A DNA stretch of 64,000 nucleotides, from positions 267,777 to 331,776 of the IMG/VR virus record IMGVR_UViG_3300047445_000186. One strand, written 5' to 3'. Below the pieces are notes generated by a model. The model was not told where the DNA came from. It was given only the letters and a program-made list of their open reading frames with translations, and ran no database searches. Positions 928-62,737 of this stretch are shown here, piece by piece. The translations under genes were made by a program, and so were the position numbers. Every line of letters begins with the position of its first letter. Within the stretch, counting starts at the first letter, position 1.

Positions 928-1021
928 CTCCTCCGTGATTAAATAAGAACTGGTGCTGATGAGGCACCTTTTCTTTTACCTGCGAACAGTGGGTACCTAT
1001 CACAACCTCGGAGTACGAGAC

Positions 1022-1837
1022 ATGTCAGACCGCACCACCATCGGTGATCGGATGAAGAGCTACGAAGCGCCTTCAACGACCCGCAAAGCTTTCAAGGGCC
1101 AGCCCCTCATTGTCCGCCTGGACGGAAGCTCATTCCACAAATTCACCAAGGGCATGAAGCGCCCATTCGATCTGGTTCTGAGCCAGCTCATGATCGACAC
1201 CATGAAGTCCATGGTCGAGCGATACAACGCGAACATCGGGTACACGCAATCGGACGAGATCACGCTCGCCTGGTACATGGAGCCATTCGAATCTCGCGAG
1301 CTCGAGTTCGGTGGCCGCTTCCAGAAGTTCGAAAGCGAACTTGCTGCATGGTGTTCTGTGAAGTTCAACTCGCTCCTTCGCGAAACCGAGTACGCCAAGA
1401 AGGCAGAGATGCTGCCGTACTTCGATGCTCGCGCGTTCGTCGTGCCGAACTTGACCGAAGCGATGCACTGCTTCCTGTGGCGCCAGCAAGATTGCACGAA
1501 GAACGCGATCAGCATGGCCGCTCAGTCGATGTTCTCGCACAAGGAACTGCAAGGGAAACATGGGCCTGAGATGCAGGAGATGATGTTCCAGAAGTTCAAC
1601 GTGAACTTCAACGACTACCCTTCGCACTTCAAGCGTGGCACGTTCGCTCGACGCGTGAAGCGCGAGTGGTTCCCGTCCGATGCAGAGATCGAAGCGATTC
1701 CGGAGAAATACCGGCCAAGTGGGCCAATCCTCCGCTCGTTCGTGCAGACCGAAGACATCTGGCTATCGAAGCAACCGAGCGGAACGCAAGCTCTGTTCGG
1801 TGACGCACCGATCGTTACAAATGTTACGGTGTCATGA
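1022..1837 (+). CDS. thg1: tRNA(His) guanylyltransferase Thg1-like 3'-5' polymerase
   Basis: GDRMKSYE, RLDGSSFHKFT, GYTQSDEITL, FDARAF, WRQQDCTKNAI and FKRG are Thg1/TLP motifs; start moved to ATG 1022 (GGAG upstream). Confidence 0.92.
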   Translation: MSDRTTIGDRMKSYEAPSTTRKAFKGQPLIVRLDGSSFHKFTKGMKRPFDLVLSQLMIDTMKSMVERYNANIGYTQSDEITLAWYMEPFESRELEFGGRFQKFESELAAWCSVKFNSLLRETEYAKKAEMLPYFDARAFVVPNLTEAMHCFLWRQQDCTKNAISMAAQSMFSHKELQGKHGPEMQEMMFQKFNVNFNDYPSHFKRGTFARRVKREWFPSDAEIEAIPEKYRPSGPILRSFVQTEDIWLSKQPSGTQALFGDAPIVTNVTVS

Positions 1838-2828: not shown

Positions 2829-3485
2829 TTAGCCGCGGCTGATATCGATGATTGCGTCCTTCGCTGCATCGGCACCGAGCGTGGTACGGATGAACGAGCG
2901 GATTGCCGAGTCTTGCAGAGCACCCTTGGTCGGGAGCAGAACTGCGTGGACTGAAGAGCCCATGCCAGCAGAACCCTTCTTGACCTTGTTGTGCACGTTG
3001 TTACCGAGCGAGCCGGCGAACTTCTTCTGGATCGCAGCAAGGAGAGCTTGAGCGGCGGTGCGGTCAAGGTTCTGAACTTCGATCGAGAACGATGGACCTT
3101 CGTGGAAAGCTTCTTCCAGAGCTTCGTAAGCGCGGCGGCCAGTCTGATTCTTTGCCTTCAGGTCGTTCACCTTGTCTTGCTTTGCGAGAACCTTGCGATC
3201 GCGCGAATCAAGAACATCATCCCAATCTGCATCGTCGTTCGCACCAGCGGCCTTAGCTGCAGGGGTGACCTTCTTCTTGTCGCCAGCGGCCCAAGCAGCC
3301 AGAGCTGCGTCGAGCTCTTTCTTCTTCTCTGAGCTCATGCCCTTCAGACGTTCGCGTTCCTTCTTGAGCTTGTCAAGCTTGGCGTTATTGCGGAACAACC
3401 CGAAGATTTCGTTGATCTGTTCGTCAGAGAGTTCATCGCCGGTCTCGACGAATTCGTTGAACTTCTTGAAGGAAACTTTTGACAT
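2829..3485 (-). CDS. Late protein, probable internal head protein
   Basis: N-terminus MSKVSFKKFNEFVE resembles T4 internal-protein capsid-targeting sequences; TAAATA upstream on - strand (3520-3525). Confidence 0.65.
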   Translation of the reverse strand: MSKVSFKKFNEFVETGDELSDEQINEIFGLFRNNAKLDKLKKERERLKGMSSEKKKELDAALAAWAAGDKKKVTPAAKAAGANDDADWDDVLDSRDRKVLAKQDKVNDLKAKNQTGRRAYEALEEAFHEGPSFSIEVQNLDRTAAQALLAAIQKKFAGSLGNNVHNKVKKGSAGMGSSVHAVLLPTKGALQDSAIRSFIRTTLGADAAKDAIIDISRG

Positions 3486-3575
3486 ACCCGTGATCCTGTG
3501 ATCGTTGTAATTTGAGATTTATTTAGACCCGGTAGCCAGAAGATCCCAATGTCCAGGTGCATACGAAGGCACGAT

Positions 3576-6674: not shown

Positions 6675-6919
6675 TGCGATACTCAATCATCTCGAATTTC
6701 CAACTGTTCTGGATGTCGATCGTGATCGGCTTGATTGCCGGGATCGGTCCAGTCGTCGGGAACATGTACCACGACTATCGGCTGCTTCCAGTTGTCTCAG
6801 TCACACCGAACGATCAGTGTGTGAAGGTCACGAACTACGAGAACGGTCATGCGTTCACTTGTCCTGACGTTGACGTCCTCCTGCGTAGGTACAAAAAGGT
6901 GATCGTCTCGGCTTCGTAA
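6674..6919 (+). CDS. Small membrane-anchored protein
   Basis: N-terminal hydrophobic helix then a two-Cys domain (CVKV...FTCPD). Confidence 0.65.
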   Translation: MRYSIISNFQLFWMSIVIGLIAGIGPVVGNMYHDYRLLPVVSVTPNDQCVKVTNYENGHAFTCPDVDVLLRRYKKVIVSAS

Positions 6920-6944
6920 ATACGACTGTCCTCCACAGGCAGTC
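6917..6944 (+). promoter_or_regulatory. Late promoter TAAATA plus leader hairpin
   Basis: TAAATA 6917-6922; GACTGTC/GGCAGTC stem 6924-6944 before TTG start at 6949. Confidence 0.65.
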
Positions 6945-9420: not shown

Positions 9421-9649
9421 GGAAGTGCACGCCCAAGTTCTTGGCGCGTTGCAAGCTCAGTACGATCTAGCACACGACGCGAACGGGTTCGAATTCCACG
9501 CGCTTGTGCGGAAAGACAAGAAGATCTCGCATGTTCTCAAGGGCGTCGCGGAAACTCCACAAGATGCGTTGTTCATGCTGGCGAGCGCAGGCTCGTTTAT
9601 GTATGAGACGTCACACACTATTTTGCCAATCGTAAATGTCAGCAGCTAA
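9404..9649 (+). CDS. Hypothetical protein
   Basis: Short ORF between DsbA-like gene and polymerase. Confidence 0.55.
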   Translation: MATMIEEVHAQVLGALQAQYDLAHDANGFEFHALVRKDKKISHVLKGVAETPQDALFMLASAGSFMYETSHTILPIVNVSS

Positions 9650-12468: not shown

Positions 12469-12765
12469 ATGAAATTTATTGCCACTTTGTCTGACGGGAC
12501 AACTCACGAGGTTGAGTTCGTGAATGAGCCCGGAATCACGTTCGAGTCGGTCGAAATCGTGACTCCAAACGGAATTGGGTACATCGCAGGTGCCCAGACA
12601 TGGAACAAGCTCCAATCGCTCGTGCCTCTCGACGCGCTGATCAACGGACTGCCATTCACCTTGGCTACCGCTGCTGGCGAGACGAAGCACTTCCTGTTGG
12701 AAGACTGCTATGTTCTCGCTGACAAGCTCACGGTGTACGTGCGGTTCGGTAAGCAGGTGTTCTGA
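12469..12765 (+). CDS. Hypothetical protein
   Basis: ORF after promoter, coupled to next gene. Confidence 0.65.
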   Translation: MKFIATLSDGTTHEVEFVNEPGITFESVEIVTPNGIGYIAGAQTWNKLQSLVPLDALINGLPFTLATAAGETKHFLLEDCYVLADKLTVYVRFGKQVF

Positions 12766-13493
12766 TGCGACTCACAGGAACTGATGTTCAAAAGCTGCGA
12801 TCGGCTATGCAGGCCTGCCGTCTGGCTGACATCGATCTTGCTGTGATCTCCGAAGGGAAGATCCGCGGTCTGAGCGAAAGCAAGAACGCCGCGATCTTCT
12901 CCGAGCTTGAGCTCTCAATCGACGCAGATATCAAGATGGGCATCACCCGTCTGTCTGAGTTCGAGAAGCGGCTCTCGCTGTTCGGCGATGACATCCTGAT
13001 CGAAGGCGAGCTGAACGCCGACAAGAAGGTCAAGAAGCTCACGATCAAGGGCAAGGCCGGCAAGATCGAATTCCGCTGCACCGACATCGCGCTGCTGGAA
13101 CGCAAGTACCCGAAGACGCACAACGAAGAAGTCGGCACGGTCATTACGATCTCGAAGCCTGAAGTCTCGTTGATCTCAAAGGGTGTGAAGACTCTGGGTG
13201 CAGAGCAAGTCACGCTCCAAGTGAAGCGCGATGGACACGTGCACGTTGAAGGTATTGACAGCTCGAACGATCGGTTCGAGACTGAACTGGAAACGGCTGC
13301 TGAGTTCGTCGATGAGGATCCGCTACCGTCTGTGAACTCGTACGCGAGCACGACTTCAGGCGTGTTCCTGAAGGTCCTTGATCACTCTGTTCGCGATGCA
13401 GACAGTGTGCAACTCATGATGATGAAGTCGGGTAACCTTGGCATGAAAGCCTATGGTCACGATCTTCTGATCATTCCACGAATCGAAATTTAA
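12765..13493 (+). CDS. Sliding clamp (gp45/PCNA-like)
   Basis: 242 aa, two-domain alpha/beta pattern with MGITRLSEF and a central proline connector; near polymerase. Confidence 0.65.
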   Translation: MRLTGTDVQKLRSAMQACRLADIDLAVISEGKIRGLSESKNAAIFSELELSIDADIKMGITRLSEFEKRLSLFGDDILIEGELNADKKVKKLTIKGKAGKIEFRCTDIALLERKYPKTHNEEVGTVITISKPEVSLISKGVKTLGAEQVTLQVKRDGHVHVEGIDSSNDRFETELETAAEFVDEDPLPSVNSYASTTSGVFLKVLDHSVRDADSVQLMMMKSGNLGMKAYGHDLLIIPRIEI

Positions 13494-15535: not shown

Positions 15536-15909
15536 TTGCAGTTGGCGATAAAGTAATTGCGAAGATCGACATCACGCAAGGTGCTGATGAAGACGGGCCT
15601 GCCCAAGTGTTCGCCACGAAGGGCACGCCTCTCGTGGTCAGGCGAATCGGTCAGCAGTGTCTGCACGTATCGCACGAGGACATTACTGATCAGTCGTTCA
15701 GGGTGTTCGACGGCGAAGTGATTGATTTTCTGCCTGATGGGAAACTTACATACGCAGTCACGGTCCAGAAGTGGGAACGAGTTGCGAAGATCATTCGCGA
15801 ATTCAAGAAGAAGAAACACGTTGGATACTTCCTGGACGTGGAAGAGCTGCCATCATCGGTGTCTCCTGAGTTCGCTTATTACCGGGTCTGGGTGTACAAG
15901 GAAGCGTAA
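15532..15909 (+). CDS. Hypothetical protein
   Basis: Coupled ORF. Confidence 0.6.
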   Translation: MIAVGDKVIAKIDITQGADEDGPAQVFATKGTPLVVRRIGQQCLHVSHEDITDQSFRVFDGEVIDFLPDGKLTYAVTVQKWERVAKIIREFKKKKHVGYFLDVEELPSSVSPEFAYYRVWVYKEA

Positions 15910-15934
15910 ATACAATCTTGAACTGAAGGATTGT
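15907..15934 (+). promoter_or_regulatory. Late promoter TAAATA plus RBS-sequestering hairpin
   Basis: TAAATA 15907-15912; ACAATCTT pairs with AGGATTGT, which contains the SD. Confidence 0.7.
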
Positions 15935-15935
15935 T

Positions 15936-16820
15936 ATGCGTCTCGACGAACTCGCCGGTGTAAAGAAATTCCAGCGACTACAGTGGCATCAAATCACGCG
16001 TCTGCTTGATCGGAAATTCGGCATCAAATACATTGGTGGCGGAAAGTACGGTCAGGTTTTCACGCACCCGGGCTGGGACTACGTCGTGAAGATCATGGAG
16101 CGCGAGGACCCGAACTATCTGGAGTTCGTTGACTTCGCGCTGAAGCATCCAGACAAGCATTATCCGAAGATCATCAAGAAGCCTTTCATGATGCACGCTT
16201 TTCACAAGCGTGAACGCAGCCAGAAGTACCAACGTCTGACTGTCCTGAAGATCGAGAAGCTTCTCCCGATCGAGAAGAACAAGCTTGACTTCATTGTTCA
16301 GAACCTGGATCAATACGCCAGCATCGTCACTCGGTACAAGAACAACGAGTACAAGCACGAGAAGAACCAAGAGGCGTACACGCAAAAGCATCCACACCAC
16401 ACGAAGGTCTTGCCTGACGGCACAAGTGAACAGAACCTGTCGTACAAGGACATCTTCGATCGGTACCCATGGTTCGAGGATCTGTGCTGGGCATTCCGCC
16501 GGATCATGGACAACTCGGAGTACGGGTCGGCCGATATCCATGGTGGGAACTTCATGGAGCGGAAAGACGGCACCGTCGTGATCATCGATCCGCTGTGGGA
16601 AGGATACAACTTCGAAGCTGCTGCATGGCAGGCCGAGATGGCTGAACGCGGCGACTACTGGGGCGACTACGAAGAGCACATCCCAATGGTCAGCGGCCCC
16701 GGGTATGACAGTGCACGCAAGCGTGAAGAACAAGAAGCGCTCGAGAAGAAGGAAGCCGAAAAGGCGGCCAGGATTGCTGGCGTGTTCGCGCACAATTTCG
16801 ACGACGATATTCCGTTCTGA
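15936..16820 (+). CDS. Protein-kinase-like (ePK/APH fold) protein, late, with putative capsid-targeting N-terminus
   Basis: IGGGKYGQVF Gly loop, YVVKI, DIHGGNFM catalytic loop, VIIDP; starts MRLDE. Confidence 0.85.
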   Translation: MRLDELAGVKKFQRLQWHQITRLLDRKFGIKYIGGGKYGQVFTHPGWDYVVKIMEREDPNYLEFVDFALKHPDKHYPKIIKKPFMMHAFHKRERSQKYQRLTVLKIEKLLPIEKNKLDFIVQNLDQYASIVTRYKNNEYKHEKNQEAYTQKHPHHTKVLPDGTSEQNLSYKDIFDRYPWFEDLCWAFRRIMDNSEYGSADIHGGNFMERKDGTVVIIDPLWEGYNFEAAAWQAEMAERGDYWGDYEEHIPMVSGPGYDSARKREEQEALEKKEAEKAARIAGVFAHNFDDDIPF

Positions 16821-16920
16821 CCGGCCGGAACTGCTAAATACTTTGCACGCACCTCTGTGCGTTCTAAAGGGTTCGGAGAAGCATTCAGCTTATCCGGTAA
16901 ATCGTTGAACGATTACCCAC

Positions 16921-19409: not shown

Positions 19410-19433
19410 AAGCCCGGTTCATCCGGGCTTTTT
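19410..19433 (+). terminator. Rho-independent terminator
   Basis: AAGCCCGG-TTCAT-CCGGGCTT followed by TTT. Confidence 0.85.
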
Positions 19434-19460
19434 GGGCTTTAGAGTCATACTTCTCGCTGC

Positions 19461-19501
19461 TAAATAGTCCTCAGAGGGCCACGTCGTGGCCGCAGAGGAC
19501 T
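19461..19501 (+). promoter_or_regulatory. Late promoter plus RBS-sequestering hairpin (cassette 1)
   Basis: TAAATA; AGTCCTC pairs with GAGGACT around an inner GGCCAC/GTGGCC stem. Confidence 0.75.
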
Positions 19502-20727: not shown

Positions 20728-20730
20728 ACA

Positions 20731-22944: not shown

Positions 22945-22953
22945 CGGGAGGGC

Positions 22954-22992
22954 TAAATAGTCCTCAGAGACCACTGCAGGTCTGAGGCTATT
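22954..22992 (+). promoter_or_regulatory. Late promoter plus RBS-sequestering hairpin (cassette 2)
   Basis: GCTAAATAGTCCTCAGAG identical to cassette 1; AATAG(T)CCTCAGA pairs with TCTGAGGCTATT. Confidence 0.75.
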
Positions 22993-22993
22993 C

Positions 22994-24199: not shown

Positions 24200-24202
24200 G
24201 CA

Positions 24203-30030: not shown

Positions 30031-30077
30031 CAACCTGCCCCCGTAAATAGTCAGTTCATACACATAGGAGAATCCTC

Positions 30078-30384: not shown

Positions 30385-30429
30385 CGGATCAGGATGACCT
30401 AAATAGAGACTTCTAGTCAGAGAATTCAA

Positions 30430-35751: not shown

Positions 35752-35924
35752 ACACCGCTCCGCTGACCGAAGAAGAGAAGGCCCTAATCATCGCTGGTGG
35801 TTGGAAGTTCCTGAGTGACGATCACATCTACATTCCGGAAGATTACGACGGATGCATGGCGTCCGGAATCGAGCAGATTCGTAAAGTGCTGTTCGCCATA
35901 AATAGGTCTCGCAATCGAGACTGA
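35748..35924 (+). CDS. Small hypothetical protein (not in ORF track)
   Basis: MNTAPLTEEEKALIIAGGWKF...; ATGA overlap with nuclease stop. Confidence 0.5.
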   Translation: MNTAPLTEEEKALIIAGGWKFLSDDHIYIPEDYDGCMASGIEQIRKVLFAINRSRNRD

Positions 35925-35926
35925 AC

Positions 35927-36340
35927 ATGCTCCTGAATGAAATCAAACTTGGTACCAAATCTGACCCTGAAGCCCTGAAGGCTTTCATGGCTGACATGCG
36001 CGCGAACACTGAAGCGCATCCATTCGCTCGTGGAATGGTAATTCATAATGACTCCGTCGGGGTTGAGGTATCAATCTTTGACGGCAAGATTCACCTGAGC
36101 TCGATCATGAGCTTTGTTCAGAAGAACGCTGGTGAAGCTTCGAAGACTCTGAAATTCCTGACTGATCTTGCTGACAAGCACCAGGTGATCATGGATCTGG
36201 CCGTTTCGCCGATCAAGAACGCCGGCGCTCGTGAAGGTAAGAGCCTTACGAAGGCGCAGCTCACGGCCTGGTACGGTAGGTACGGTTTCAAGAAGGCACG
36301 TGGCGATTACATGGAGCGCCCACCTGGCGCCGCTGCGTAA
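35927..36340 (+). CDS. GNAT-fold acetyltransferase-like protein, late
   Basis: IHLSSI..QKNAGEASKTL (motif A-like), LADKH, LTAWYGRYGF; TAAATA 35899-35904; starts MLLNE. Confidence 0.65.
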   Translation: MLLNEIKLGTKSDPEALKAFMADMRANTEAHPFARGMVIHNDSVGVEVSIFDGKIHLSSIMSFVQKNAGEASKTLKFLTDLADKHQVIMDLAVSPIKNAGAREGKSLTKAQLTAWYGRYGFKKARGDYMERPPGAAA

Positions 36341-36368
36341 ATAGAGCTGCACAATTAGGAAATTTCAA

Positions 36369-38362: not shown

Positions 38363-38363
38363 G

Positions 38364-43651: not shown

Positions 43652-43713
43652 GATTATCCTTAAGAGGGACTGGAGATACCGGCTATTTACACGCTATCTA
43701 CGCGGTCCAAAAA

Positions 43714-48230: not shown

Positions 48231-48316
48231 TTTGCACTACTTAACTTGGGACAGTGTATTTAGTGCAGGATGGTCGCGTTGGGGCACAACCTTTATCGGC
48301 AGTGCCCCACGAAACA

Positions 48317-48955: not shown

Positions 48956-48988
48956 TTCTTTTCCTATTGGAAGGGTTGTACCCGGTAT

Positions 48989-51900
48989 TTAGATAACGAT
49001 CAGTTTGAGTTCCGAGGCTTGCGCCTGACGGAACCTGAATACGCGATTGTTCACGCGTTCAACGACTGGAACTTGTTGTGGTGCTGCATCAGTTGGACGC
49101 CACAGGTAGATGGTCGGGATCACAGCAGTCGGTTGGCTGAACGAGATTTCGATCAGCTGCGAACCTGGAGCATCAATGACCATTGGAGTGACGAAGTCAG
49201 CGTACAGCACGCCACCACCTGGCAATGCGCCGAACGGTCCAGTACCAACCGGGTACATCATCGTGACGGTGTCTGGAGGAGTGTCCAGGCCGTCAGCATC
49301 GTACCCGTACATGCTGTACCCGTTAGTGTCTACTGCTCGAGCCGTGAACGCCTCAACGATTGCCGTAGCAGCCGAGGCTGTTGGCTCATCCTTCACGCTG
49401 ATACCCAAGCCAATTGCTGGAATACCGAAGCCGAACCCGGTCGGCGTGTAATTGATTGCATCATCGTCAGAGAGACGCTGAACGAATTCTTCCAGCGTCG
49501 TTCCGGTGATGTCGCCGTCTGTCAGGTAAGGATTAACCAAACTCGACAGATCGAGCATCGTGGCTTGCTCTTGCGGAGTCAGATCCACTGGATCCTTCAG
49601 CGCGAGCATCTTCGCGGTGATGAAGTGATCAGTCAGAGCTTGGCCAGCATCGTAGTAGCCGTCTACACCGTCTTCACCATCGTACGGCATGTTGTCGTAA
49701 CCTGGCAAGAATCCGGTGAATGGGCCGTCGCTCATCACGACGTCCATGACGTTCGAGTAGTTCGCCTTGATGTAGAACTTGTACGAATCAGTGACCGAGA
49801 CATGCAGCACGTCTTGGTACATCGAGTCTTCATCCAGACCACCGCCACTGATCATGAACGCGATACCTTCGGTCATGTTCACGTGGATGTTCTCGTTCAT
49901 GCCATTGCCGTACGTGACGATCGTGGCTTCTGCGTTCAGCGGCAGGTACTTCGACGCGAACACCGAGTCCCAGCTGAAGATCACAGGTTCGTTCAGCGAC
50001 GTGCCGATCGAGCGAACAGTACCGACCAACTCACCTGTAGTAGCGGCTCGGACCACGACGTGCGTCGCAGGGTCACTGAACTCGGCCTGTGTAGTACCAT
50101 CAAGCTTAGTGATCAGCGTTGGAATCCAGCCTCTCAGGACCCCTGTCTCAGGGCTCGTGTTCACCAATGGAACGCCAGAACCTGTGGTGTGATCGACGAC
50201 GCGGAGGTCAGTCGTCTGCAGACCGAGCGGAGCGAACGACGCGAGCTGAACGGGGTCACGGGAATTGATCGAGATTCGGATGTCGTCTGAGCGAGTCCGG
50301 GAGAACAGAACGAAGTCTTCGTTCGTTGGAGCACGACCTGCAGAGGTGCGAACGATCGCAAGATCATGCCCCATCGCCAGGTTGTAGTCATCGGAAACGA
50401 GATCGACAACGAACGTCTTACCAGCCTCAGCGATTGGCAGACCGAACTGAACGAACTTGTCAGAGACGGAGAATTCTCCACCACCAACAACCGCACCGTT
50501 CCGGTACAGCGTCCACCAATTGTCGTTCAGCGCCTTGATCGTGTACACGCACGAAGTCGTGTCATCACGGAGACGCTGGAGCGTGATCAGACCGATGCTC
50601 GATGTCCATGGAGAACCTGCGCCGAGGAGCAGACCATCTTCGAACACGGCCACTTCTGGCGTGACGAACTTGAAACCAATCTTGCCGTTCCAGTACCACT
50701 CGTTGATCGATGCTGGCTTGTTCCAGCCAGAGACCGAACCGTGCACCAAGAACATTGGACGCTTTTCGTACGTCTCGAACAGGAACGCATCAGGAGCGAG
50801 CAATCCGGACATGCCTTCATGGATCGTCCAGTGGATGTTCAGCTCAGTGTTGTAGTACGAGCGACCGTCTGTCGCCATGTTCACGGTGATCGGGGTGCTC
50901 AGAACAGGAGAACCGTTGTGAACGCCAGTCGTGTGAACACCTTGAATGGAGTACGTACGTGGACCAATCATTTGAACTGTCCACTTTGCAGGAACAGTTT
51001 CAAAGAAGTTATCAGCGCGTGGAACCAGGCGTGGAACGCGGTGCGAGACGATGCCAGCTGGAGTCGTTTGAACTGGTGGCTGATTCAGAACAGTCCAGCC
51101 AATCACGTCACCGCCGTCAGTCACGTCAGTCATGACTTCACCAGCTTCACCGAGGAGCTGAACGTCTGCGTACGATGTCGGGCACGTTGGGTTCCCCGAG
51201 TCAACATTGATGTTCAGCCAACTGATAGTCGCTGGCGGATGATCGCCTGTGAACGCTGTTTCTTCGAATACTCCGTTGCTCAGGCGAGTCAAACGAACTG
51301 TCGTGTTCCCTGCACCCGCAGCCAGCGTGAACATGGCTTCGTACCATTCACCATCGACGAGAGTGTCGGTCGAGATGAATTTTGATTCGGTGCCAATGTA
51401 TGCTACTGGGCGGCGAGCAGAGTCGAATGCTGCTTCACGGCGTGGATTGATCGCGATCGTGTCGCCATCAGTCAGGAATTCGAACACCGCAGCATCGTCA
51501 AGAAGGGCTTCATCGACCTTGAATTTGATCTTGATCGTCTCAGCGAAGAACGGATCATCGAGCTCCTTTACGAGAACGGCGTGGATTTCATTGTCTTGTG
51601 AATCAACGTTCACACCCTGGCCGTATGGAGTGCTCACGAACGTGAACAGATCTGGTCCAGATTCGCGAGTCCAAGAAGTGAAGTCCTCAGTGTACAGTGC
51701 AGTCGCTGTCTCGCTCCAAGTTGAGCGAGCACGGGCTGCAATGAATGGCTTACCAGCTTCTACGAGCTTGAACGAGATACCTTCCTCTTCATTCGAGTAC
51801 GAATCGCCTACATTGATCGTGTCAACGAGCATCCAAGACGTTTCGTCTTCCGAGTAGAACTCGAGAGCGAATGAGCTCGAGTACCAAAGTTCCAAGTCAG

Positions 51901-53794: not shown

Positions 53795-53812
53795 TACTTA
53801 TTCGATCAAAGC

Positions 53813-56800: not shown

Positions 56801-59800
56801 CGTGCCGACGACCTGCGCATTGAAGTGCACATCGGTGTTCAAGTCGTCAATGCTGAACCAACGGTTTTCATCAGTCGAGTCGATCACGGTGAACGCATTG
56901 AAGTCTGTTGGGATCGACACTGGGTCGAAAATCAGCTTCGTGAACTGCGTCAGAGTGTCATCAACCGAGAGGCGGAGCTCTGGGAAGATCTTCGAACGGC
57001 TGTCACCGTACTCAGCAACCTTGTACGCCCAGTACTCGTCGAGCTTGGCGTCTTGGAAGCGATCATTGTTCAGGAATGCGTCGATCGATGCGTTCGTACC
57101 CTTCATCTGGATCAGACCACGCCAGAAGTTGAACTGCGAACGATCAGTCAGATCGAGATCGGCCATGTACTGCTTTGGCGTGAAGCCGAGAAGCGCGAGC
57201 GCGTGACGTGTCGACAGTTCATCTTCGAACGCATGATCTGGATCGTAGTACTGAGCGATCTTGTCAGCGCTGGACTGCAGATTGCGCTTCACTTCGTTAC
57301 CAACGAGGTAGTGACCGCCGAATTCTGGACGCAGCGAGTTCGATCCTTGACGACGGCCGTTCAGCTTGATCGTCACGATGCGAGCACCAGAGAACGGATC
57401 GTAAATCAGGCCTTCACCAGTGGATGGCGACATCAGATTGCTGAACACGAACAGGTGCTCGTACTCATCAACTTGTGCGTGCACCGAGAACATCGGAACC
57501 TTTGCGCTGATCATCGACTTACCACGTGAACGCAGGATCGTCAGATCATCGGTGTTCATCTTCGCGCCAAGCACGTCGAACACGCCTGGATTTGCACGGA
57601 CGTCGAACAGAGCGGTGTCAAAGTACTGGCTGAGCAGACCGACGTCTTGCTCGACCCAGAGCTTGTCCATGAATGGAACAAGCACGTGACCTTGGTTCAG
57701 CTGAATACCCGTGTAAACGGCGTCGACGAACTTTTCAATTTCGAGCTGCCAATTGCGGATACGGCCAGTCGCCTTATCGGTGTTACCACCTTCTTCGTCT
57801 TGGAAGCGCCAGCCATCAGCCTCGAGCTTCTGCGAGTAACCGAACAGGAAGTCAACGACGTTCTGCAGACCAGTGATCGTCAGTGGAAGCTGAGTGCTTG
57901 TCGTTCCAGCGATCTTTGTTGGCTGTGTCCAAGTACGATCGGTGTGCGCCGAGCTCAAGGCCTTGAACGTGACTTCGTCGCCAGAAGTGAACGTGAAGTA
58001 CTCGATGCCGAGGAAGCGTGGGTTGTATCCTTCAACGCGGAAGATCCAGTCTTGACCAGCGTTCGATGGGACACGACCAGCAGGTGTCGTGTTCTCTGGG
58101 AGAGCCGAGCCGAGCTGAACAACCGTGATACGCAGACCTTGGACCCAGATGTCGCGAGCGAATGGCGAGCGCTTGAAGCGGAGCTCATAAGCCGACTCTG
58201 GGATTGCGTCTACGTCAGTGAACACGCGCAGATCGTCTGTCGAAACAAGACCACCAGCGCGGTAACCGAGATTCACATCCCAGCCGCGGTAAGCTTGGAT
58301 CGCGTAACCTTGAGCGGTGTCAACAGATGAACCACGCAGAGCTTGCGTGAAGATCTGACCGAACCCGTGGAACTGCGCGTACGAAGCTTGATCGAACGTG
58401 ACCAGCAGACCAGAGCCATCGGCATTCGCCGTGATGTTGAACGTGTCACCGATCCGGAAAGGCTTGCCTTCGTCTTCAATCAGAACGTCGTTCAGCGTGT
58501 ATCCAGCACCAGTGATAGTACCAAGTTCGCCTTCATTCACGTACCCAATCACGGTGCCGTCCTTAGCACGGACCGTGAACGAGAACTTACGACCTTCAGC
58601 GTATCCAGAGTGCTTGATCGTCAGATCAATTGCCTTTGGACCAGACAGCGAAGACATCGTGAACGGTGTCTTGCGAGCGACTGAGCGGATCGCATCACCT
58701 TGCAGGCGGAAACGTGGGTGTCCTGGAACAGCGATGTCAAAACCATCGTACAGGATACCATCAACTTCAACCCACTCAAAGCCCCAGCAGTGACCAAGCC
58801 ATGCCATTGGATCTTTGCGGAACAGAGCACGAGTCAGGGCGTACCGGAACTCGATCGAGCGGAGCCAGACCGTTTCAACTGGAGAACCTTCGCCGAACAG
58901 GTATGGATCGGCTGGGCTGAGCGGCAGACTGTTCGTCAGAGCGTTCGCCGCTTGTGGCGAGGAAGCATTCACGTACGGCGACAGGAGCGCGTCGTTCACA
59001 GTGTTCACTGAGAGCTTCAGACCTGGACGAGCTGCCTTGATGTCGTTCCACATCGAGAGCTTCCACGAGCGGACCTGTTCGAACAGAACATCTTCGAACG
59101 GCGAGTTCACGTCCTGCATCAGGACCCACTGTGTACCGCTGAATTGCTGACCAGTACCGATCGTGACGACCGTCTTGGCGACCAGCGGAGTCGCAGCACG
59201 GCTCCAGGCACCAGAGGAAACGATCCACAGACCATTGTTCGAAGCAGCAGCTTCGGAGGCAAGCAGAAGAACATCACCGTTCAAGAGGTTCTTGCCATCA
59301 ACCGTTGGCAGACCATTCAGTGGCGTGCCAGTTGGAGCTTCGGACCAGAGGACTGCCTTTGCGGTCACACCGATGTAACCAAGCGAAGGGTTCTGAACCA
59401 TTGCCTGAGTGACGTTCGCCTTGTACAGAGTGTTCCAGTCCGTTGGCTTCACTGCGAAACCAAGGAGCTTCCATGGCTCGAGATTCGGACGGGAAGTAGG
59501 AATCACACCAGCGATCGAAGCTTGGTGCGCCTTCAGTGCGTCGAACCAGCGAGCTGGCATACCGAGCGAGCTGTAGTTCCACGTGAACGCGTCAGTGGAA
59601 ACGTAGTTCGGTGCTGTTGGATCGTACTTGTTCGCAGCTGCCCATGAAGCGAGCTCACGCTGGAGCTCATCCTTCAGAGGACCAGTCAGGGCCGTTTGAA
59701 CTTCTTGTTCATTGAAGTACGTTCTGTGCTGAGCATTGATCCCAGTGTACAGACGGTTCTCAACTTCAAGGAGAACGCCGTTCAGCAGGATCGCTGGATC

Positions 59801-62695
59801 GAGAGCGACCCATGGTGCAAGCAGATTCGACTCTGGCTGCCACAGAGCGCCGTCCCAGACGTTCAGCTCGTTCGTTGCACGATTGTACCAGTGTTGACCA
59901 ACTGCCGAAGCAACTGGAGCGATCATACCGTCGCTCAGAACGTTGAACGCACGGAGCTCATTGCCGTTCGCTGCTGGGTAAATCCAGAGCTCACCACGGT
60001 GCGGTGCCGTTGGAGGAACAGTCGTGAATGAACCAACGGCTGGAGTGAACGTGCCATCTGCGCGTTTGATCAGCATTCCTGGCGACAGCATACGGTCACG
60101 GAATTCTTGCGTGAATCGGTAGATCGGCGACAGGTGACCGTCATGGTGACGGAAGAGTTCAGTGCCGAGCTCGTTGTCGAACACGACGCCTGGCTTGACC
60201 AGTGGAGTCACGCCAAGCATTGGGAGCGTAGCTGGGAAACCGATCACTGGTGATGTGCTGTCGAACAGAACAGTGCGGACATCATTGTCCTTTGCACGAA
60301 CGGAGAGCAGGTAGTCAGCGAGCTTTGAAGGCGAAGTCAGAACACCTTCATTACCGAAGAACTGCACGAGCTCCTTCAGGTAAAGATCAACAACCGAGTT
60401 CAGAGCCGATTCGTACTTGCGCTGAGCGAAGTCAACGATCGACAGTGGTGTGTTGTCACGCTGCATCAGCAGAGCGGCAAGCAGATTTTGTTGCTCGGAC
60501 CAGAGCTTGATCGAACCACCGAACGCGTTGTCCTGGGTCTGACCGATCTGATTCACGAGGATACCACGGAAGTGGCTGTACAGCGTACCTTCTGGGATTG
60601 CATCGCCATTATCCGCAGCGACGTTGTTGTACAACATCCGCGGAATCTGCCATGCACCAATGCCTGCTGCGTCACCATTCGCACCTTCGAACAGGTCATA
60701 GATCTGTTCGTCAGTATCACGGTAAACGTACCGAGCGCTCTCGAAATTACCAACCGCAAATTGGAACTTGTCGCCAGTCTTGAATGGAATCGAACCAGAC
60801 AGGATCATCGCGGAGAACAGACCATTGCTGTACGGTGTGTTCACGCCGATCGTAGAAAGATTGTCAGGCAAGCTCTTCATCTTCGAGCCAGTCACAGAGA
60901 ACGTGGTCGCGCTCGTTGCTTCGAGCGTCCAGATCTGCTGCGCGCTGAATGGATCAATCACTTGAACATCGAACAGACCATTCCCGTCGCCAGTGAATGA
61001 CTGAGAAGTGATCTCGGCGGACGAGTGGCCTGGATGCCAGATCGAGTGCAGTGCACCGTCGATCGTCTTGTAGAACAGGAGATTGTTTCCTTCTTCGATC
61101 AGACCGTGTCCGAACAAGAAGTCAGAGGATGCGTTCGAGGCATGAGCGACGCGGCGCTGCAGAGCAGGATCGATATCAGCCGTTGGGTCTTCCATGTAGA
61201 AGAAGATTGGCGACACGAGCGATGCATGCGAACCATCGTACCGGTACAAGTCGAACTGTGGAGCCTGATTGAAATCAGTCTTCTGTTGTTCGTACTCAGT
61301 GCCACCGACATCAGTTGGCGTACCCACTGCTTCAGCGTGCGGCTGAGTTGGAGCGGCCATGCGACCAACGATACCCGAGTTCTCAATGAAGAACCGAGTG
61401 TTCAGCTTCAGGTTCGAGTTGTACTCAATGATCGGACGCGTAGCTTGGATGATCTTCGACAGATCGAGACCAGCGGCAGTCGCTTCATCACGGTGCATCC
61501 AGAAGTTCGACTCTTGCCAGTCGTTCGTGTTCGACACAGAGGTCGAGCCGTCAGCGACCCAGATGCCGGATGCTTGCGCAACGTACAGAGTTTCACGATT
61601 ACGATCAAAAACGCGCGCACCATCAGTTGTGCTTGGGTAATCAGCAGCGCGAACGAACGCACCTGGTTTCACAACATAAATGCCGTTATCGACAGAGGCG
61701 CCTTGGTTCTTTACAAGGATACGATCGTTCTCTTTGATCTGAACGCCATCAATCACTTGGTACAGATCGAGCGAGTCGACTGCATTGATCTTGCCCTTCA
61801 CACCCGGGCCGACGTTCGGCGTCACACCGTACGTGCTCGACAGGAATGGGGCTGCGATCGTGAAGCTATCGCCAGCAGCGAAGCTTTCGTTACCGATCCA
61901 AACACCGTCACCGTCATAGATTGGATCGCGAATGATCTTGAACGTCAGGAGAGCTTCACCAGCGCCAGACGCCATGAAGTTCACGGTGTACGTCGAGGAT
62001 TGCTCAGCTACGATCGTTGGGAGAGTGTATGACTGAACGATTTCGTCTGGAGCCAGGCCAGCACCCGAAGCCGTCACAGTGAAGTGTGTGCTGTCAGAGA
62101 AAGCGACGACCCACGACTGTGCGTAGAAACCAGTGCCAGTCAGAACGATCGCGCGTGTCGTTCCTGCAACAACGTTCAGCTTGTCGAGATCGGTCGCCTT
62201 TGGGGCCGAGATCGTGTAGTATTCTGGCGCGAGCGATGGATTCCATGCGAGCGCTGGCGTATTAGGCAGCGACTTCGCGACCCAGTAGTAGTTGAAGAAG
62301 TTCGTGAACCGATCGAAGTTGATCGGTGGCGCGTAGTTGTTCCCTTGGGAGTACAACCACGAGGACTGATCTTCCGAGATCCCAAGGACTTCAGCCTTGC
62401 GGATCAGATCCTGTGCAGTGAACGAGTACGTCTCATTTCCGACCTTGAACGAGAACACAGGCACAAGGGCGTTCACGTCACGCTCTGGATTCGACTGCGG
62501 AACCTTTGGGGTACGGTCGTCTGGGGCCGATGGCTTGCGACCAACGTAACCGTACAGAGGTACCGCTTCATCCTTCGTCAGGAAGCGATTGAACAGATTA
62601 TCAATCAGCGACGTGATCATCGGGTTCCGAAGGTTCTTCGGAACGAGATTCGTCATATCCTGGAAGGGGAGGGAGTAGTCTTTCATGAGCTTCAT
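53813..62695 (-). CDS. Giant baseplate wedge-like virion protein, 2960 aa
   Basis: PPINFDRF.N..NYYW, QATRPIIEY, PWKLLGF, MKGT, EYWA..EYG, WG..EVG.VWWD, YYFWVKN, VFKTS; late promoter on - strand at 62717-62722. Confidence 0.8.
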   Translation of the reverse strand: MKLMKDYSLPFQDMTNLVPKNLRNPMITSLIDNLFNRFLTKDEAVPLYGYVGRKPSAPDDRTPKVPQSNPERDVNALVPVFSFKVGNETYSFTAQDLIRKAEVLGISEDQSSWLYSQGNNYAPPINFDRFTNFFNYYWVAKSLPNTPALAWNPSLAPEYYTISAPKATDLDKLNVVAGTTRAIVLTGTGFYAQSWVVAFSDSTHFTVTASGAGLAPDEIVQSYTLPTIVAEQSSTYTVNFMASGAGEALLTFKIIRDPIYDGDGVWIGNESFAAGDSFTIAAPFLSSTYGVTPNVGPGVKGKINAVDSLDLYQVIDGVQIKENDRILVKNQGASVDNGIYVVKPGAFVRAADYPSTTDGARVFDRNRETLYVAQASGIWVADGSTSVSNTNDWQESNFWMHRDEATAAGLDLSKIIQATRPIIEYNSNLKLNTRFFIENSGIVGRMAAPTQPHAEAVGTPTDVGGTEYEQQKTDFNQAPQFDLYRYDGSHASLVSPIFFYMEDPTADIDPALQRRVAHASNASSDFLFGHGLIEEGNNLLFYKTIDGALHSIWHPGHSSAEITSQSFTGDGNGLFDVQVIDPFSAQQIWTLEATSATTFSVTGSKMKSLPDNLSTIGVNTPYSNGLFSAMILSGSIPFKTGDKFQFAVGNFESARYVYRDTDEQIYDLFEGANGDAAGIGAWQIPRMLYNNVAADNGDAIPEGTLYSHFRGILVNQIGQTQDNAFGGSIKLWSEQQNLLAALLMQRDNTPLSIVDFAQRKYESALNSVVDLYLKELVQFFGNEGVLTSPSKLADYLLSVRAKDNDVRTVLFDSTSPVIGFPATLPMLGVTPLVKPGVVFDNELGTELFRHHDGHLSPIYRFTQEFRDRMLSPGMLIKRADGTFTPAVGSFTTVPPTAPHRGELWIYPAANGNELRAFNVLSDGMIAPVASAVGQHWYNRATNELNVWDGALWQPESNLLAPWVALDPAILLNGVLLEVENRLYTGINAQHRTYFNEQEVQTALTGPLKDELQRELASWAAANKYDPTAPNYVSTDAFTWNYSSLGMPARWFDALKAHQASIAGVIPTSRPNLEPWKLLGFAVKPTDWNTLYKANVTQAMVQNPSLGYIGVTAKAVLWSEAPTGTPLNGLPTVDGKNLLNGDVLLLASEAAASNNGLWIVSSGAWSRAATPLVAKTVVTIGTGQQFSGTQWVLMQDVNSPFEDVLFEQVRSWKLSMWNDIKAARPGLKLSVNTVNDALLSPYVNASSPQAANALTNSLPLSPADPYLFGEGSPVETVWLRSIEFRYALTRALFRKDPMAWLGHCWGFEWVEVDGILYDGFDIAVPGHPRFRLQGDAIRSVARKTPFTMSSLSGPKAIDLTIKHSGYAEGRKFSFTVRAKDGTVIGYVNEGELGTITGAGYTLNDVLIEDEGKPFRIGDTFNITANADGSGLLVTFDQASYAQFHGFGQIFTQALRGSSVDTAQGYAIQAYRGWDVNLGYRAGGLVSTDDLRVFTDVDAIPESAYELRFKRSPFARDIWVQGLRITVVQLGSALPENTTPAGRVPSNAGQDWIFRVEGYNPRFLGIEYFTFTSGDEVTFKALSSAHTDRTWTQPTKIAGTTSTQLPLTITGLQNVVDFLFGYSQKLEADGWRFQDEEGGNTDKATGRIRNWQLEIEKFVDAVYTGIQLNQGHVLVPFMDKLWVEQDVGLLSQYFDTALFDVRANPGVFDVLGAKMNTDDLTILRSRGKSMISAKVPMFSVHAQVDEYEHLFVFSNLMSPSTGEGLIYDPFSGARIVTIKLNGRRQGSNSLRPEFGGHYLVGNEVKRNLQSSADKIAQYYDPDHAFEDELSTRHALALLGFTPKQYMADLDLTDRSQFNFWRGLIQMKGTNASIDAFLNNDRFQDAKLDEYWAYKVAEYGDSRSKIFPELRLSVDDTLTQFTKLIFDPVSIPTDFNAFTVIDSTDENRWFSIDDLNTDVHFNAQVVGTFTKVVQAGDLIKLPFIADELTTAGIAADRVNMTTLIASEDGEITVTGYGPATPKFNPVKLFNYVAAELIEEIPVWHPAYDQHTPVALESVNIISTLDPARYNVSTQVVGNNNYDPLHMWGAKEVGRVWWDTTNLDYVPYYDTMIFQTVDERLSRWGTMTDFATMDVVEWVESNVPPAEYNAQALIDAGNADLDVRTKADGQVYGAKTYSRERVWNTRAIAWSKAGVAIEAAHPSFNSSFQSNLTFTNDGLIMLESGTFAQYGITGGMRVGAWQEDETVLRPLSEYNVIGEFTKFVSYEGDLFTPVVHSLDTLQAVVDLSVLEHTEAVGELLFTAEPVVESLVPASNGAQTVYTHLQAVPASTWTIVHDMGSTAVQVSLYDGMNQVVLPDEITVVDLNTVIVTFSSNTDGHAIVLTGSTGSDWDVSTYLRVMEVDSGQTDHILIRKDRGVDPSNADSPLHFATFDAVAGEQYTFEVPSFGLQITVKVLNSGTFPSDLLVRLIAEALAGSVKLNDAAKVELVVPMVENDLVMDGSTLSNDPTDPLYTLNNGVGWRAWAVPTQAQLDADARVPNSSWFPYVGPWYAFPSAPVNIVQDAASTTPYMLNDGTQIDRYKTTWAAWSELKSTMTHEVATSTGQMVFTLPAGVTNDRVSVYVNGVSQLSGTYKLVGRTLTVLSVQSGSEVVLIVRAVNPSAADLAFDPAIADNLLIQRQYKLDYQYVAVPIRNENGQISTTKYYFWVKNRSTAAHGKNLSVKAVSQLLINGPSNYLTFQHISNSAPFFYDAITISGLSYIVTKDDAFKLRFTRNFTLRDDPNQLDLKNTHVEWSLIRPGQRTKVPEVLWQKMVNTACGKDSAGSTIPSARRVSYDERNGTRTQFGFGSDQVLAPTEMVRGTLLFTILNTKLVDDSGQIPIPDYMNFLDFNGSDTWFETVESTRGTLTRIWNEGKVSQINELFFAVLEDICAANYEMTDVFKTSRLSAYSIKVVRPSPIAPAYE

Positions 62696-62737
62696 GCGCG
62701 TGTAATCACAGTTCGGTATTTAGACCCGTGGCAAAAG

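What the first reader, a model, noticed from the sequence alone, without database searches (positions are those of the whole stretch)
940..62722. Late promoters (TAAATA) repeatedly coupled to leader hairpins that occlude the RBS
Seen: TAAATA at 940, 6917, 15907, 16835, 19461, 22954, 30044, 30400, 35899 and 36338 on +, and at 3520, 43684, 48257, 48986 and 62717 on -, mostly ahead of structural-type genes. At 6917, 15907, 19461, 22954, 35899 and 48257(-) a stem starts in or beside the hexamer and pairs with the SD/start-proximal region. The two fibre cassettes keep the pairing with different sequences. Known: T4 uses TATAAATA with gp55, and a few T4 late genes are silenced on early read-through RNA by such hairpins. 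Inference: here this is a general design, in which late initiation removes the 5' arm and unlocks translation.
Basis: partly seen in the sequence, partly recalled or inferred. Interest (0 to 1): 0.62.

Follow-up and report, generated by a model that had tools for sequence, protein, structure and literature searches.

The report
Late promoters split RBS-masking hairpins
A giant T4-related phage uses the short motif TAAATA as its late promoter, and at roughly a fifth of these promoters an RNA hairpin hides the ribosome site on longer read-through RNA: the trick already known from T4 lysozyme, reused here (again on the lysis enzyme), not a universal rule.

Summary
The window is the last 64 kb of a 332-kb IMG/VR record of an uncultured jumbo T4-superfamily phage. 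Its true size is about 360 kb, and its nearest cultured relative is Ralstonia phage RsoM2USA.

**Promoter:** TAAATA is real and far above chance. There are 17 in the window against 4 expected. It is the most enriched hexamer upstream of gene starts in this phage and two relatives, and it is conserved at orthologous genes. The gp55-like late sigma factor lies in the 28.7 kb missing from this record, found in a near-identical sister contig. A gp45-like clamp lies in the window.

**Hairpins:** All six named hairpins fold as described. Four are clearly non-random (15907, 48257-, 19461, 35899) and two are weak (6917, 22954).

**Genome-wide:** 25-30% of TAAATA leaders have an occluded ribosome binding site (RBS) in long RNA, no more than other intergenic leaders. 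A cut at the predicted late start relieves two thirds of them, against 30% for mock cuts (pooled p 2e-5). The strongest clean case is the endolysin, mirroring T4 gene e.

**Verdict:** This is a known T4 mechanism in a new, distant clade, at about 20% of late promoters. It is not a general design. No transcript 5' ends or expression data could be obtained.

The parts
15907..15912 (+). TAAATA late-promoter-like box. Its TAA is the stop codon of gene 15532-15909. It precedes gene 15936-16820 (294 aa, weak kinase-like PHROG hit).
15904..15941 (+). RBS-masking helix. The inner stem 15912-15919 / 15927-15934 covers the SD AAGGA. The outer stem 15904-15908 / 15937-15941 pairs the first two promoter bases with the UG of the AUG.
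   Evidence: -13.7 kcal/mol, z -3.46, 1 of 200 shuffles fold as well; opening energy 13.3 long, 3.3 short; native top-ranked among 47 chimeras.
48257..48262 (-). TAAATA box ahead of the 75-aa gene 48003-48230(-), which is 78% identical to its orthologue in relative G002.
48233..48267 (-). A 7-bp helix. The 5' arm overlaps the first two promoter bases. The 3' arm ends 3 nt before the AUG.
   Evidence: z -3.38, 1 of 200; opening energy 11.2 long, 1.3 short.
19461..19466 (+). TAAATA box of fibre cassette A (genes 19504-20727 and 20731-22944).
19466..19501 (+). Bipartite helix. AGUCCUC pairs with GAGGACU (the SD) around an inner GGCCAC/GUGGCC stem.
   Evidence: -21.7 kcal/mol, z -2.16; opening energy 15.9 long but still 9.8 short, so relief is only partial.
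19411..19434 (+). Intrinsic-terminator-like hairpin (6-bp GC stem followed by UUUUU), 27 nt upstream of the 19461 box. It would already limit read-through.
   Evidence: sequence read directly. The scan did not list it.
22954..22959 (+). TAAATA box of fibre cassette B (genes 22994-24199 and 24203-27394).
22956..22990 (+). Candidate helix pairing AAUAG(U)CCUCAG with CUGAGGCUAUU over the SD. Weak: an alternative pairing of the same 5' arm with upstream GAGGGC frees the SD.
   Evidence: z -1.31, 21 of 200; opening energy 8.6 long, 7.1 short.
35899..35904 (+). TAAATA box ahead of gene 35927-36340 (137 aa, no family). It lies inside the weakly scored ORF 35748-35924.
35888..35930 (+). Helix bridging the promoter. 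UGUUC upstream of the box pairs with GAACA just before the AUG, around an inner 7-bp stem that starts right after the box.
   Evidence: z -2.02; opening energy 13.7 long, 6.1 short; top-ranked.
6917..6922 (+). TAAATA box. Its TAA is the stop codon of gene 6674-6919. The downstream gene probably starts at TTG 6949, the only start upstream of a CxxC motif, but this is unverified.
6924..6944 (+). Hairpin starting 2 nt after the box. Not better than shuffles on its own.
   Evidence: z -1.2, 25 of 200; opening energy 10.2 long, 3.1 short, if TTG 6949 is the start.
43684..43689 (-). TAAATA box ahead of gene 43208-43651(-) (phrog_644). The box's 3' half plus GCCG pairs with the AUG and the first codons.
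   Evidence: -15.9 kcal/mol against -4.5 for the short form; footprint -18..+10 needs 12.0 long, 6.8 short.
3520..3525 (-). TAAATA box ahead of gene 2829-3485(-), in a divergent intergenic region. Moderate long-range occlusion.
   Evidence: opening energy 10.8 long, 4.7 short.
16835..16840 (+). TAAATA box with a long (101-nt) structured leader before gene 16942-17370. No RBS gating.
30044..30049 (+). TAAATA box ahead of gene 30078-30332. No RBS helix.
30400..30405 (+). TAAATA box ahead of genes 30430-32754 and 32751-35018. It is insulated by a strong terminator-like hairpin at 30351-30377 rather than gated by an RBS helix.
36338..36343 (+). TAAATA box whose TAA is the stop codon of gene 35927-36340. 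It heads the operon 36369-38990, which includes fibre cassette C. No RBS helix.
48986..48991 (-). TAAATA box whose TAA is the stop codon of the 1601-aa gene 48989-53794(-). It precedes gene 48317-48955(-). No RBS helix.
62717..62722 (-). TAAATA box ahead of the 2960-aa virion structural protein gene 53813-62695(-). No RBS helix.
940..945 (+). TAAATA that is probably not a promoter. It is part of the A-tract of a terminator-like hairpin plus U-run that follows the gene ending at 903.
12765..13493 (+). gp45-like sliding clamp, the activator of T4-type late transcription. It lies directly after the DNA polymerase gene 9636-12440.
   Evidence: phrog_223, E 2.9e-7..

Best explanation
(C/G)TAAATA is the -10-type late promoter of this roughly 360-kb T4-superfamily jumbo phage.

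**Machinery.** Host RNA polymerase would read the promoter carrying a gp55-like sigma factor. That factor is encoded in the 28.7 kb absent from this record and is present in a near-identical sister contig. The gp45-like clamp encoded in the window would assist.

**Spacing.** The promoters sit a median of 26 nt before start codons.

**The gated subset.** At about one promoter in five, the promoter lies inside or directly beside the 5' arm of an RNA helix whose 3' arm contains the Shine-Dalgarno sequence and/or the AUG. RNA that reads through from upstream forms the helix and is poorly translated. RNA that starts about 6-9 nt after the box lacks the 5' arm and has an open ribosome site.

This is the mechanism established for T4 genes e, soc, 49 and I-TevI. 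As in T4, the strongest case here is the endolysin.

**Shown here:**
- motif enrichment, placement and conservation;
- presence of gp55 and gp45 homologues;
- predicted helices and their specific complementarity;
- the positional bias of the helices relative to the promoter, replicated in three genomes.

**Inferred:** the start-site position, late timing, the existence of read-through RNA, and the effect on translation.
For: **Motif**
- 17 sites against 4.2 expected in the window.
- TAAATA is the top-enriched hexamer at -50..-12 of gene starts in all three genomes: 51 against 2.3 expected in this phage, 59 against 2.3 in G002, 81 against 4.8 in RsoM2USA.
- 79 of 95 sites are intergenic.
- Presence is conserved at orthologues: 19 both, 4 and 8 one only, 94 neither; odds ratio 56, p 1e-12.
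- In the window the motif precedes none of the replication genes and does precede virion genes.

**Machinery**
- phrog_234 (gp55) matches at G001:77303-77677, E 2e-31. The protein is 31% identical to T4 gp55.
- G001 bridges the end of this record to its start.
- A clamp homologue lies at window 12765-13493.

**Helices: chimera tests**
- This phage: ddG 4.14 against 2.06 kcal/mol, 18 of 51 above 5 kcal/mol against 10% expected, p about 5e-5.
- G002: 3.76 against 1.66, 15 of 58 against 7.5%, p 5e-5.
- RsoM2USA: 27 of 80 against 11%; 18 of 80 rank top, p 3e-8.

**Relief at the predicted start**
- 69%, 71% and 60% of occluded leaders are relieved, against 26%, 34% and 33% for mock cuts.
- Pooled: 33 of 50 against 41 of 136, p 1.7e-5.
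- The result holds for start offsets from +4 to +10.

**Validation and examples**
- The same method ranks the known T4 genes e and 49 at the top.
- The endolysin (PF11860, E 9e-58) has a ddG of 17 kcal/mol, with the promoter inside the 5' arm and both SD and AUG paired.
- Two orthologue groups keep a promoter-bridging helix with unrelated sequences.
Against: - No 5'-end or expression data were available.
- RBS occlusion in long RNA is not more common at TAAATA genes (25-34%) than at other intergenic leaders (36-44%). Junction-spanning complementarity is equally common in controls: 21.6% against 18.6%.
- Hairpin status is weakly conserved between orthologues: 1 pair both, 5 and 3 one only, Spearman 0.18.
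- There is no clear enrichment where the upstream gene is co-directional.
- Some gated promoters are already preceded by a terminator, as at 19411-19434.
- No gp33 homologue was found.
- The full T4 octamer TATAAATA never occurs in the genome.
- Two of the top-scoring helices, at G000 177135 and 15157, look like ordinary terminators.
Confidence: 0.62

Rival explanations
1. The helices are generic intergenic RNA structures that happen to overlap promoter and RBS. Candidates are terminators, 3'-end stabilisers or processing sites of the upstream gene. Spacers in this 90%-coding genome are only about 30-60 nt, so overlap would be common. On this view they are not a late-specific translational switch.
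For: - Occlusion and junction-spanning complementarity are as frequent at non-TAAATA intergenic leaders.
- Two top cases carry U-runs (G000 177135 and 15157).
- The site at 940 is part of a terminator.
- Orthologue conservation is weak.
Against: - Most of the helices lack a U-run.
- The 3' arms are SD or AUG sequences paired with anti-SD motifs such as CCUC or CUCC.
- Predicted late starts split the helices far more often than mock cuts do. This holds in three genomes, pooled p 1.7e-5.
- Late leaders are unusually open once cut: 3.8 against 5.3 kcal/mol, p 0.0016.
Confidence: 0.2
2. The helices are translational-coupling devices. A ribosome terminating at the upstream stop codon, often the TAA of the box itself, melts the 5' arm. 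This allows initiation on the next gene, so long RNAs are coupled rather than silenced.
For: - In 11 of 95 sites the TAA of the box is the stop codon of the upstream gene. This includes 6917, 15907, 36338 and 48986(-).
- At 6917 and 15907 the 5' arm begins 1-5 nt after that stop.
Against: - Several of the best cases have the upstream stop far away. It is about 55 nt upstream of the box at 48257(-) and 74 nt at 19461.
- Other cases lie in divergent spacers, as at 3520(-).
- In many cases the 5' arm lies upstream of the box, as for the endolysin and G000 249603.
Confidence: 0.1
3. The inverted repeats act in DNA, as operators for a dimeric regulator or as cruciforms that modulate the late promoter. 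They would not act in RNA.
For: The repeats overlap or flank the promoter box. In T4, I-TevI binds an operator that overlaps its own late promoter (PMC2988022).
Against: - The repeat sequences are all different, so there is no shared operator.
- G-U pairs and bulges fit RNA rather than DNA.
- The 3' arms coincide with the SD or AUG.
Confidence: 0.04

Closest known systems
T4 late promoters (TATAAATA, read by gp55 with gp33 and the gp45 clamp)
   Same: - An AT-rich -10-only box with no conserved -35 element (logo).
- gp55 and gp45 homologues are present.
- The box lies in front of virion and lysis genes.
   Different: - The conserved core is the hexamer TAAATA. Position -1 is C or G in this phage and A in relatives G002 and RsoM2USA. 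This resembles the CTAAATA recalled from memory for T4-like cyanophages, which was not checked here.
- The T4 octamer occurs zero times in the genome.
- The four bases after the box are GC-rich, not AT-rich.
- No gp33 homologue was detected.
T4 RBS-sequestering leaders of genes e, soc, 49 and I-TevI (also I-TevII, I-TevIII, segB, Aeh1 mobE)
   Same: - The late promoter is embedded in or beside the 5' arm of a helix that pairs the SD or AUG.
- Late RNA lacks the arm (PMC3014915 and PMC2988022).
- The lysis enzyme is the strongest case.
- My metric recovers T4 genes e and 49 as the top hits.
   Different: - The phage clade is distant: the DNA polymerase is below 35% identical to T4-like ones.
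- The endolysin belongs to a different family, PF11860 muramidase.
- The excess over the chimera baseline is larger and significant in three jumbo genomes: 18-25 percentage points, against about 9 points and not significant in T4.
- No experimental support exists here.
Ralstonia phage RsoM2USA (MG752970), nearest cultured relative
   Same: - The DNA polymerase is 46.8% identical.
- It has a gp55 homologue, E 6e-33.
- TAAATA is its top upstream hexamer.
- 18-27 of its 80 leaders show the same helix design.
   Different: - GC content is 41% against 54%.
- Position -1 of the box is mostly A.
- Its genome paper does not mention promoters, sigma or gp55.

Membership tests
T4-type late promoter system | A conserved AT-rich -10 box (TATAAATA in T4) about one helical turn upstream of the start site, with no -35 element. 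| tested here: inconclusive
   The core TAAATA is strongly enriched, correctly oriented and conserved. There is no upstream conservation beyond position -1. The full octamer is absent, and the distance to the start site is unmeasured.
T4-type late promoter system | A phage-encoded gp55-family sigma factor. | tested here: met
   It is absent from the 332-kb record. It is present in the 99-100% identical sister contig, which fills the record's 28.7-kb gap. The protein is 31% identical to T4 gp55, E 2e-12.
T4-type late promoter system | A gp45-type sliding clamp available as activator. | tested here: met
   phrog_223 matches at window 12849-13280, E 2.9e-7, inside gene 12765-13493 next to the DNA polymerase.
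T4-type late promoter system | The gp33 co-activator. | tested here: not met
   phrog_254 finds nothing in G000, G001 or G002, and only E 0.04 in RsoM2USA. gp33 is short and poorly conserved, so absence is not proven.
T4-type late promoter system | Late, replication-coupled transcription starting at the box. | not testable with these tools
   No RNA data were available.
T4 e/soc/49/I-TevI-type promoter-split RBS hairpin | A helix sequesters the SD and/or AUG on RNA that starts upstream. | tested here: met
   By prediction only. 13 of 51 leaders need at least 9 kcal/mol to open in this phage, 17 of 58 in G002 and 20 of 80 in RsoM2USA. In the window: 15907, 48257(-), 19461, 35899, with weaker cases at 6917, 22954, 3520(-) and 43684(-).
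T4 e/soc/49/I-TevI-type promoter-split RBS hairpin | The late promoter lies in or beside the 5' arm, so late RNA lacks it and the RBS opens. | tested here: met
   This assumes a start 4-10 nt after the box. 33 of 50 occluded leaders are relieved, against 41 of 136 mock cuts, p 1.7e-5.
T4 e/soc/49/I-TevI-type promoter-split RBS hairpin | Early or middle transcripts really read through into the gene. | not testable with these tools
   The evidence is indirect. No terminator-like site lies between the replication genes and 15907. A terminator precedes 19461. Tandem and divergent contexts do not differ clearly.
T4 e/soc/49/I-TevI-type promoter-split RBS hairpin | Translation is lower from the long leader than from the short one. 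| not testable with these tools
   This needs toeprinting, reporter fusions or ribosome profiling.

The most novel reading that the evidence does not exclude
In this clade of jumbo T4-like phages (this phage, G002, RsoM2USA), RNA structure at ribosome sites may be a genome-wide layer of control. About a third of all leaders are occluded. Late promoters would then be one of several devices that license translation by setting the 5' end, alongside processing, coupling or a phage helicase or RNase. On this reading promoter-split hairpins are used far more systematically than in T4, and they arise and decay quickly at individual genes.
Probability: 0.15. Interest if true: 0.55.

Novelty: new member of a known kind. 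Interest (0 to 1): 0.35.

Why it matters
- **Conservation of the T4 solution.** The T4 way of keeping late proteins, notably the lysis enzyme, silent on early read-through RNA is retained or re-invented in very distant, uncultured jumbo relatives.
- **A usable regulatory map.** The work yields a late-promoter motif, a gp55 homologue and about 50-80 promoters per genome for a clade whose only genome paper mentions no promoters or sigma factor.
- **A route to experiment.** RsoM2USA is cultured, so the prediction can be tested directly.
- **A caution for readers of raw sequence.** Hairpins over ribosome sites are common in this genome's leaders whether or not a TAAATA box is present. The meaningful signal is where the promoter cuts them, not that they exist.

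Tried and rejected
- **Close DNA relatives.** Megablast of 22 kb against the phage collection found nothing.
- **gp55 in the record itself.** T4 gp55, phrog_234, phrog_12791, RsoM2USA gp55 and a local phmmer search over six frames all failed. The cause is the record's 28.7-kb gap, not absence of the gene.
- **gp33.** Not found.
- **Endolysin homologues.** None were found in G002, RsoM2USA, XacN1 or GAP32, so conservation of the endolysin helix could not be tested.
- **Fibre-gene relatives.** Hits in IMG/VR lie mostly in unrelated contigs of 30-50 kb at 35-50% identity. They are useless for leader covariation.
- **Read-through context.** I expected gated promoters to be enriched where the upstream gene is co-directional. 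This was not supported: 13 of 37 against 5 of 14 in this phage, 14 of 42 against 1 of 16 in G002.
- **Occlusion frequency.** I expected occlusion to be more common at TAAATA genes. This is rejected.
- **Consensus scans.** Sigma-70 promoter and terminator scans of the window are at or below shuffle expectation and add little.
- **Timeouts.** Only the parts they printed are used.
Full report
**What the window is.** The window is bases 267,777-331,776, the last 64 kb, of a 331,776-bp IMG/VR virus record estimated at 94% complete. GC content is about 53-54%.

It encodes:
- a family-B DNA polymerase of the T4 type. The best match is Ralstonia jumbo phage RsoM2USA at 46.8% identity, followed by XacN1, Xoo-sp13 and the Rak2/GAP32 group at about 32%;
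- a clamp, an exonuclease, a primase and a DnaB-like helicase;
- virion genes interleaved with these: three paralogous fibre or baseplate cassettes, a PAAR protein, a peptidase/lysin, and virion proteins of 1601 and 2960 aa.

My own gene caller gives 486 genes and 90% coding density for the record.

**The motif.** TAAATA occurs 17 times in the window against 4.2 expected, and no shuffle reached 17. The two it missed, 32357+ and 54100-, are intragenic.
- In the whole record, 71 of 89 sites lie within 80 nt upstream of a same-strand start.
- In the 360-kb reconstruction, 79 of 95 sites lie in the 10% of DNA that is intergenic. The median distance to the start codon is 26 nt.
- An unbiased hexamer count at -50..-12 of all starts puts TAAATA first in three genomes. 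This phage has 51 observed against 2.3 expected. Relative G002, whose DNA polymerase is 63% identical, has 59 against 2.3. RsoM2USA has 81 against 4.8.
- Among 125 reciprocal-best orthologues between this phage and G002, presence of the box is conserved: 19 both, 4 and 8 one only, 94 neither; odds ratio 56, p 1e-12.
- The flank differs from T4. Position -1 is C or G here and A in G002. TATAAATA never occurs. There is no -35-like conservation. Positions +5 to +11 are T-rich then A-rich and poor in G.
- In the window the box precedes none of the replication genes.
- The site at 940 is the exception. It forms the A-tract of a terminator-like hairpin and is probably not a promoter.

**The sigma factor.** No gp55 homologue is found in the record.
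- A sister contig, G001 (IMGVR_UViG_3300046615_000261), is 99-100% identical over shared parts. It runs across the record's end into its start and carries 28,695 extra bases.
- In that gap lies a 162-aa protein matching the late-sigma family at E 2e-31. It is 31% identical to T4 gp55 over the sigma-region-2-like part.
- gp55 homologues are also present in RsoM2USA, XacN1, GAP32 and G002.
- The gp45-like clamp is window 12765-13493.
- gp33 was not detected.

**The hairpins in the window.** All six claimed stems appear in minimum-free-energy folds, with the 5' arm in or next to the box and the 3' arm on the SD or AUG. "Opening energy" below is the energy to open positions -14 to +3. "Short" means RNA starting at the sixth base after the box.

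| Site | Shuffle z | Opening energy long / short, kcal/mol | Comment |
|---|---|---|---|
| 15907 | -3.5 | 13.3 / 3.3 | strong |
| 48257(-) | -3.4 | 11.2 / 1.3 | strong |
| 19461 | -2.2 | 15.9 / 9.8 | relief only partial |
| 35899 | -2.0 | 13.7 / 6.1 | moderate |
| 22954 | -1.3 | 8.6 / 7.1 | a competing fold frees the SD |
| 6917 | -1.2 | 10.2 / 3.1 | only if the unverified TTG 6949 is the start |

- 43684(-) masks its AUG, and 3520(-) is moderate. The other five promoter-like sites have no RBS helix.
- The two fibre leaders share an identical 5' arm and the same CCUC:GAGG core. "Different sequences" therefore holds for the loop and 3' flank only.
- A terminator-like hairpin at 19411-19434 already precedes the 19461 promoter. 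Another at 30351-30377 precedes the 30400 promoter.

**Is it more than chance, and is it general?** For each TAAATA leader I swapped the 60 nt upstream of the predicted start among promoters (chimeras). I then asked how much the native upstream part raises the energy needed to open the RBS.

| Genome | Leaders | Native / chimera mean, kcal/mol | Above 5 kcal/mol | Chimera expectation | p |
|---|---|---|---|---|---|
| This phage | 51 | 4.14 / 2.06 | 18 | 10% | about 5e-5 |
| G002 | 58 | 3.76 / 1.66 | 15 | 7.5% | 5e-5 |
| RsoM2USA | 80 | 4.14 / 2.03 | 27 | 11% | 3e-8 for 18 top-ranked |
| T4 (TATAAATA) | 21 | 4.69 / 3.28 | 6 | 19.5% | 0.07 |

In T4 the two top-ranked leaders are the known genes e and 49. 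This validates the measure.

The key control cuts the other way. Non-TAAATA genes with an intergenic spacer are occluded just as often in the long form, 36-44% against 25-34%. They show the same rate of specific junction-spanning complementarity, 18.6% against 21.6%.

What is special at TAAATA is position.
- Among occluded leaders, a cut at the predicted late start relieves 69%, 71% and 60% in this phage, G002 and RsoM2USA. Mock cuts at matched distances relieve 26%, 34% and 33%.
- Pooled, that is 33 of 50 against 41 of 136, odds ratio 4.5, p 1.7e-5.
- Cut leaders are unusually open: 3.8 against 5.3 kcal/mol, p 0.0016.
- The result does not depend on the assumed start offset between +4 and +10.

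So about one late promoter in five shows the full design, and the rest do not.

**Which genes are gated.** Genome-wide, the strongest clean case is the endolysin at G000:56926-57495 (PF11860 muramidase, E 9e-58).
- An 11-nt arm ending in the first three bases of the box pairs with the stretch that contains the AUG.
- An inner CUCC:GGAG stem pairs the SD.
- The opening energy falls from about 20 to 2.6 kcal/mol in the short form.
- This mirrors T4 gene e, although the enzyme family is different.

Other gated genes include an adaptor-like 624-aa protein, a virion protein, a small membrane protein and several genes of unknown function.

**Conservation.** Across 19 orthologue pairs that carry the box in both genomes, hairpin strength is not correlated (Spearman 0.18). 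One pair is strong in both, five only here and three only in G002. Two groups do keep a promoter-bridging helix with unrelated sequences:
- G000 249633 and G002 139247, which have roughly 20-bp helices with the box in the loop;
- the adaptor-like gene, in all three genomes.

The design therefore looks selected at some genes but labile overall.

**Context.** Gated promoters are not clearly enriched where the upstream gene is co-directional. In 11 of 95 sites the TAA of the box is the stop codon of the upstream gene. That leaves room for translational coupling at sites such as 6917 and 15907.

**Comparison with what is known.**
- T4 reviews describe this mechanism for genes e, soc, 49 and I-TevI (PMC3014915). 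They also describe it for I-TevII, I-TevIII, segB, Aeh1 mobE and further T4 genes (PMC2988022).
- The T4 late promoter is an 8-bp box about one helical turn upstream of the start (PMC2988020).
- The RsoM2USA genome paper mentions no promoter, sigma factor or gp55.

The present case is therefore a new member of a known kind, in a distant jumbo clade. Its frequency is of the same order as in T4, and it is not a general design.

**Limits.**
- Start sites, timing, read-through and effects on translation are all inferred.
- Folding energies are predictions for isolated RNA at 37 C.
- Gene starts come from my own simple caller.

Noticed in passing
G000 ends; G001:C1:61285-89979 (loci L028, L029): The record holding the window is incomplete. 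A 99-100% identical sister contig joins its end to its start through 28,695 extra bases. The genome is therefore about 360.5 kb and circularly permuted or terminally redundant. The gp55-like gene lies in that gap.
   Followed up: yes
window 6917, 15907, 36338, 48986(-); 11 of 95 sites genome-wide: The TAA of the promoter box doubles as the stop codon of the upstream gene. Promoter, stop codon and the hairpin's 5' arm are packed within about 15 nt. This could allow translational coupling.
   Followed up: partly
genome-wide (G000 plus gap), -50..-12 of gene starts: After TAAATA, the next enriched hexamers are TACAAT (27 observed, 2.7 expected) and TAGAAT (13 observed, 1.1 expected). G002 shows TATAAT and GTATAA instead. 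These are probably host sigma-70-type -10 boxes of early promoters.
   Followed up: no
promoter position -1: this phage against G002 and RsoM2USA: The base before TAAATA is C or G in 86% of sites here. It is A in 68% of G002 sites and mostly A in RsoM2USA. This is a clade-internal shift in promoter flank that might track gp55 differences.
   Followed up: no
non-TAAATA intergenic leaders genome-wide: About 36-44% of other leaders with an intergenic spacer also have a strongly occluded RBS, needing at least 8-9 kcal/mol to open. Mock truncation mostly does not relieve them. How these genes are translated is unexplained.
   Followed up: partly
window 19504-27394 and 37160-38990: There are three paralogous cassettes. 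Each has a roughly 400-aa phrog_9998 protein followed by a variable fibre or baseplate-wedge-like protein of 737, 1063 or 208 aa. Relatives of the first gene occur in unrelated 30-50-kb viral contigs, which suggests a mobile receptor-binding module.
   Followed up: partly
window 1022-1837: A gene for a tRNA-His guanylyltransferase (Thg1-like) protein, phrog_4717, E 3.5e-71. It is preceded by a strong terminator at about 950-975.
   Followed up: no
window 43714-45617(-) and 48989-62695(-): A PAAR-motif protein sits next to a 535-aa peptidase/lysin-domain protein, probably the cell-puncturing tip. Two giant virion proteins of 1601 and 2960 aa follow. The larger one is driven by the TAAATA at 62717(-).
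   Followed up: no
RsoM2USA MG752970: 246650-247105: The cultured relative encodes a gp55-family late sigma factor (E 6e-33) in a gene annotated only as hypothetical. It has about 80 TAAATA leaders. [quoted passage not shown]
   Followed up: partly
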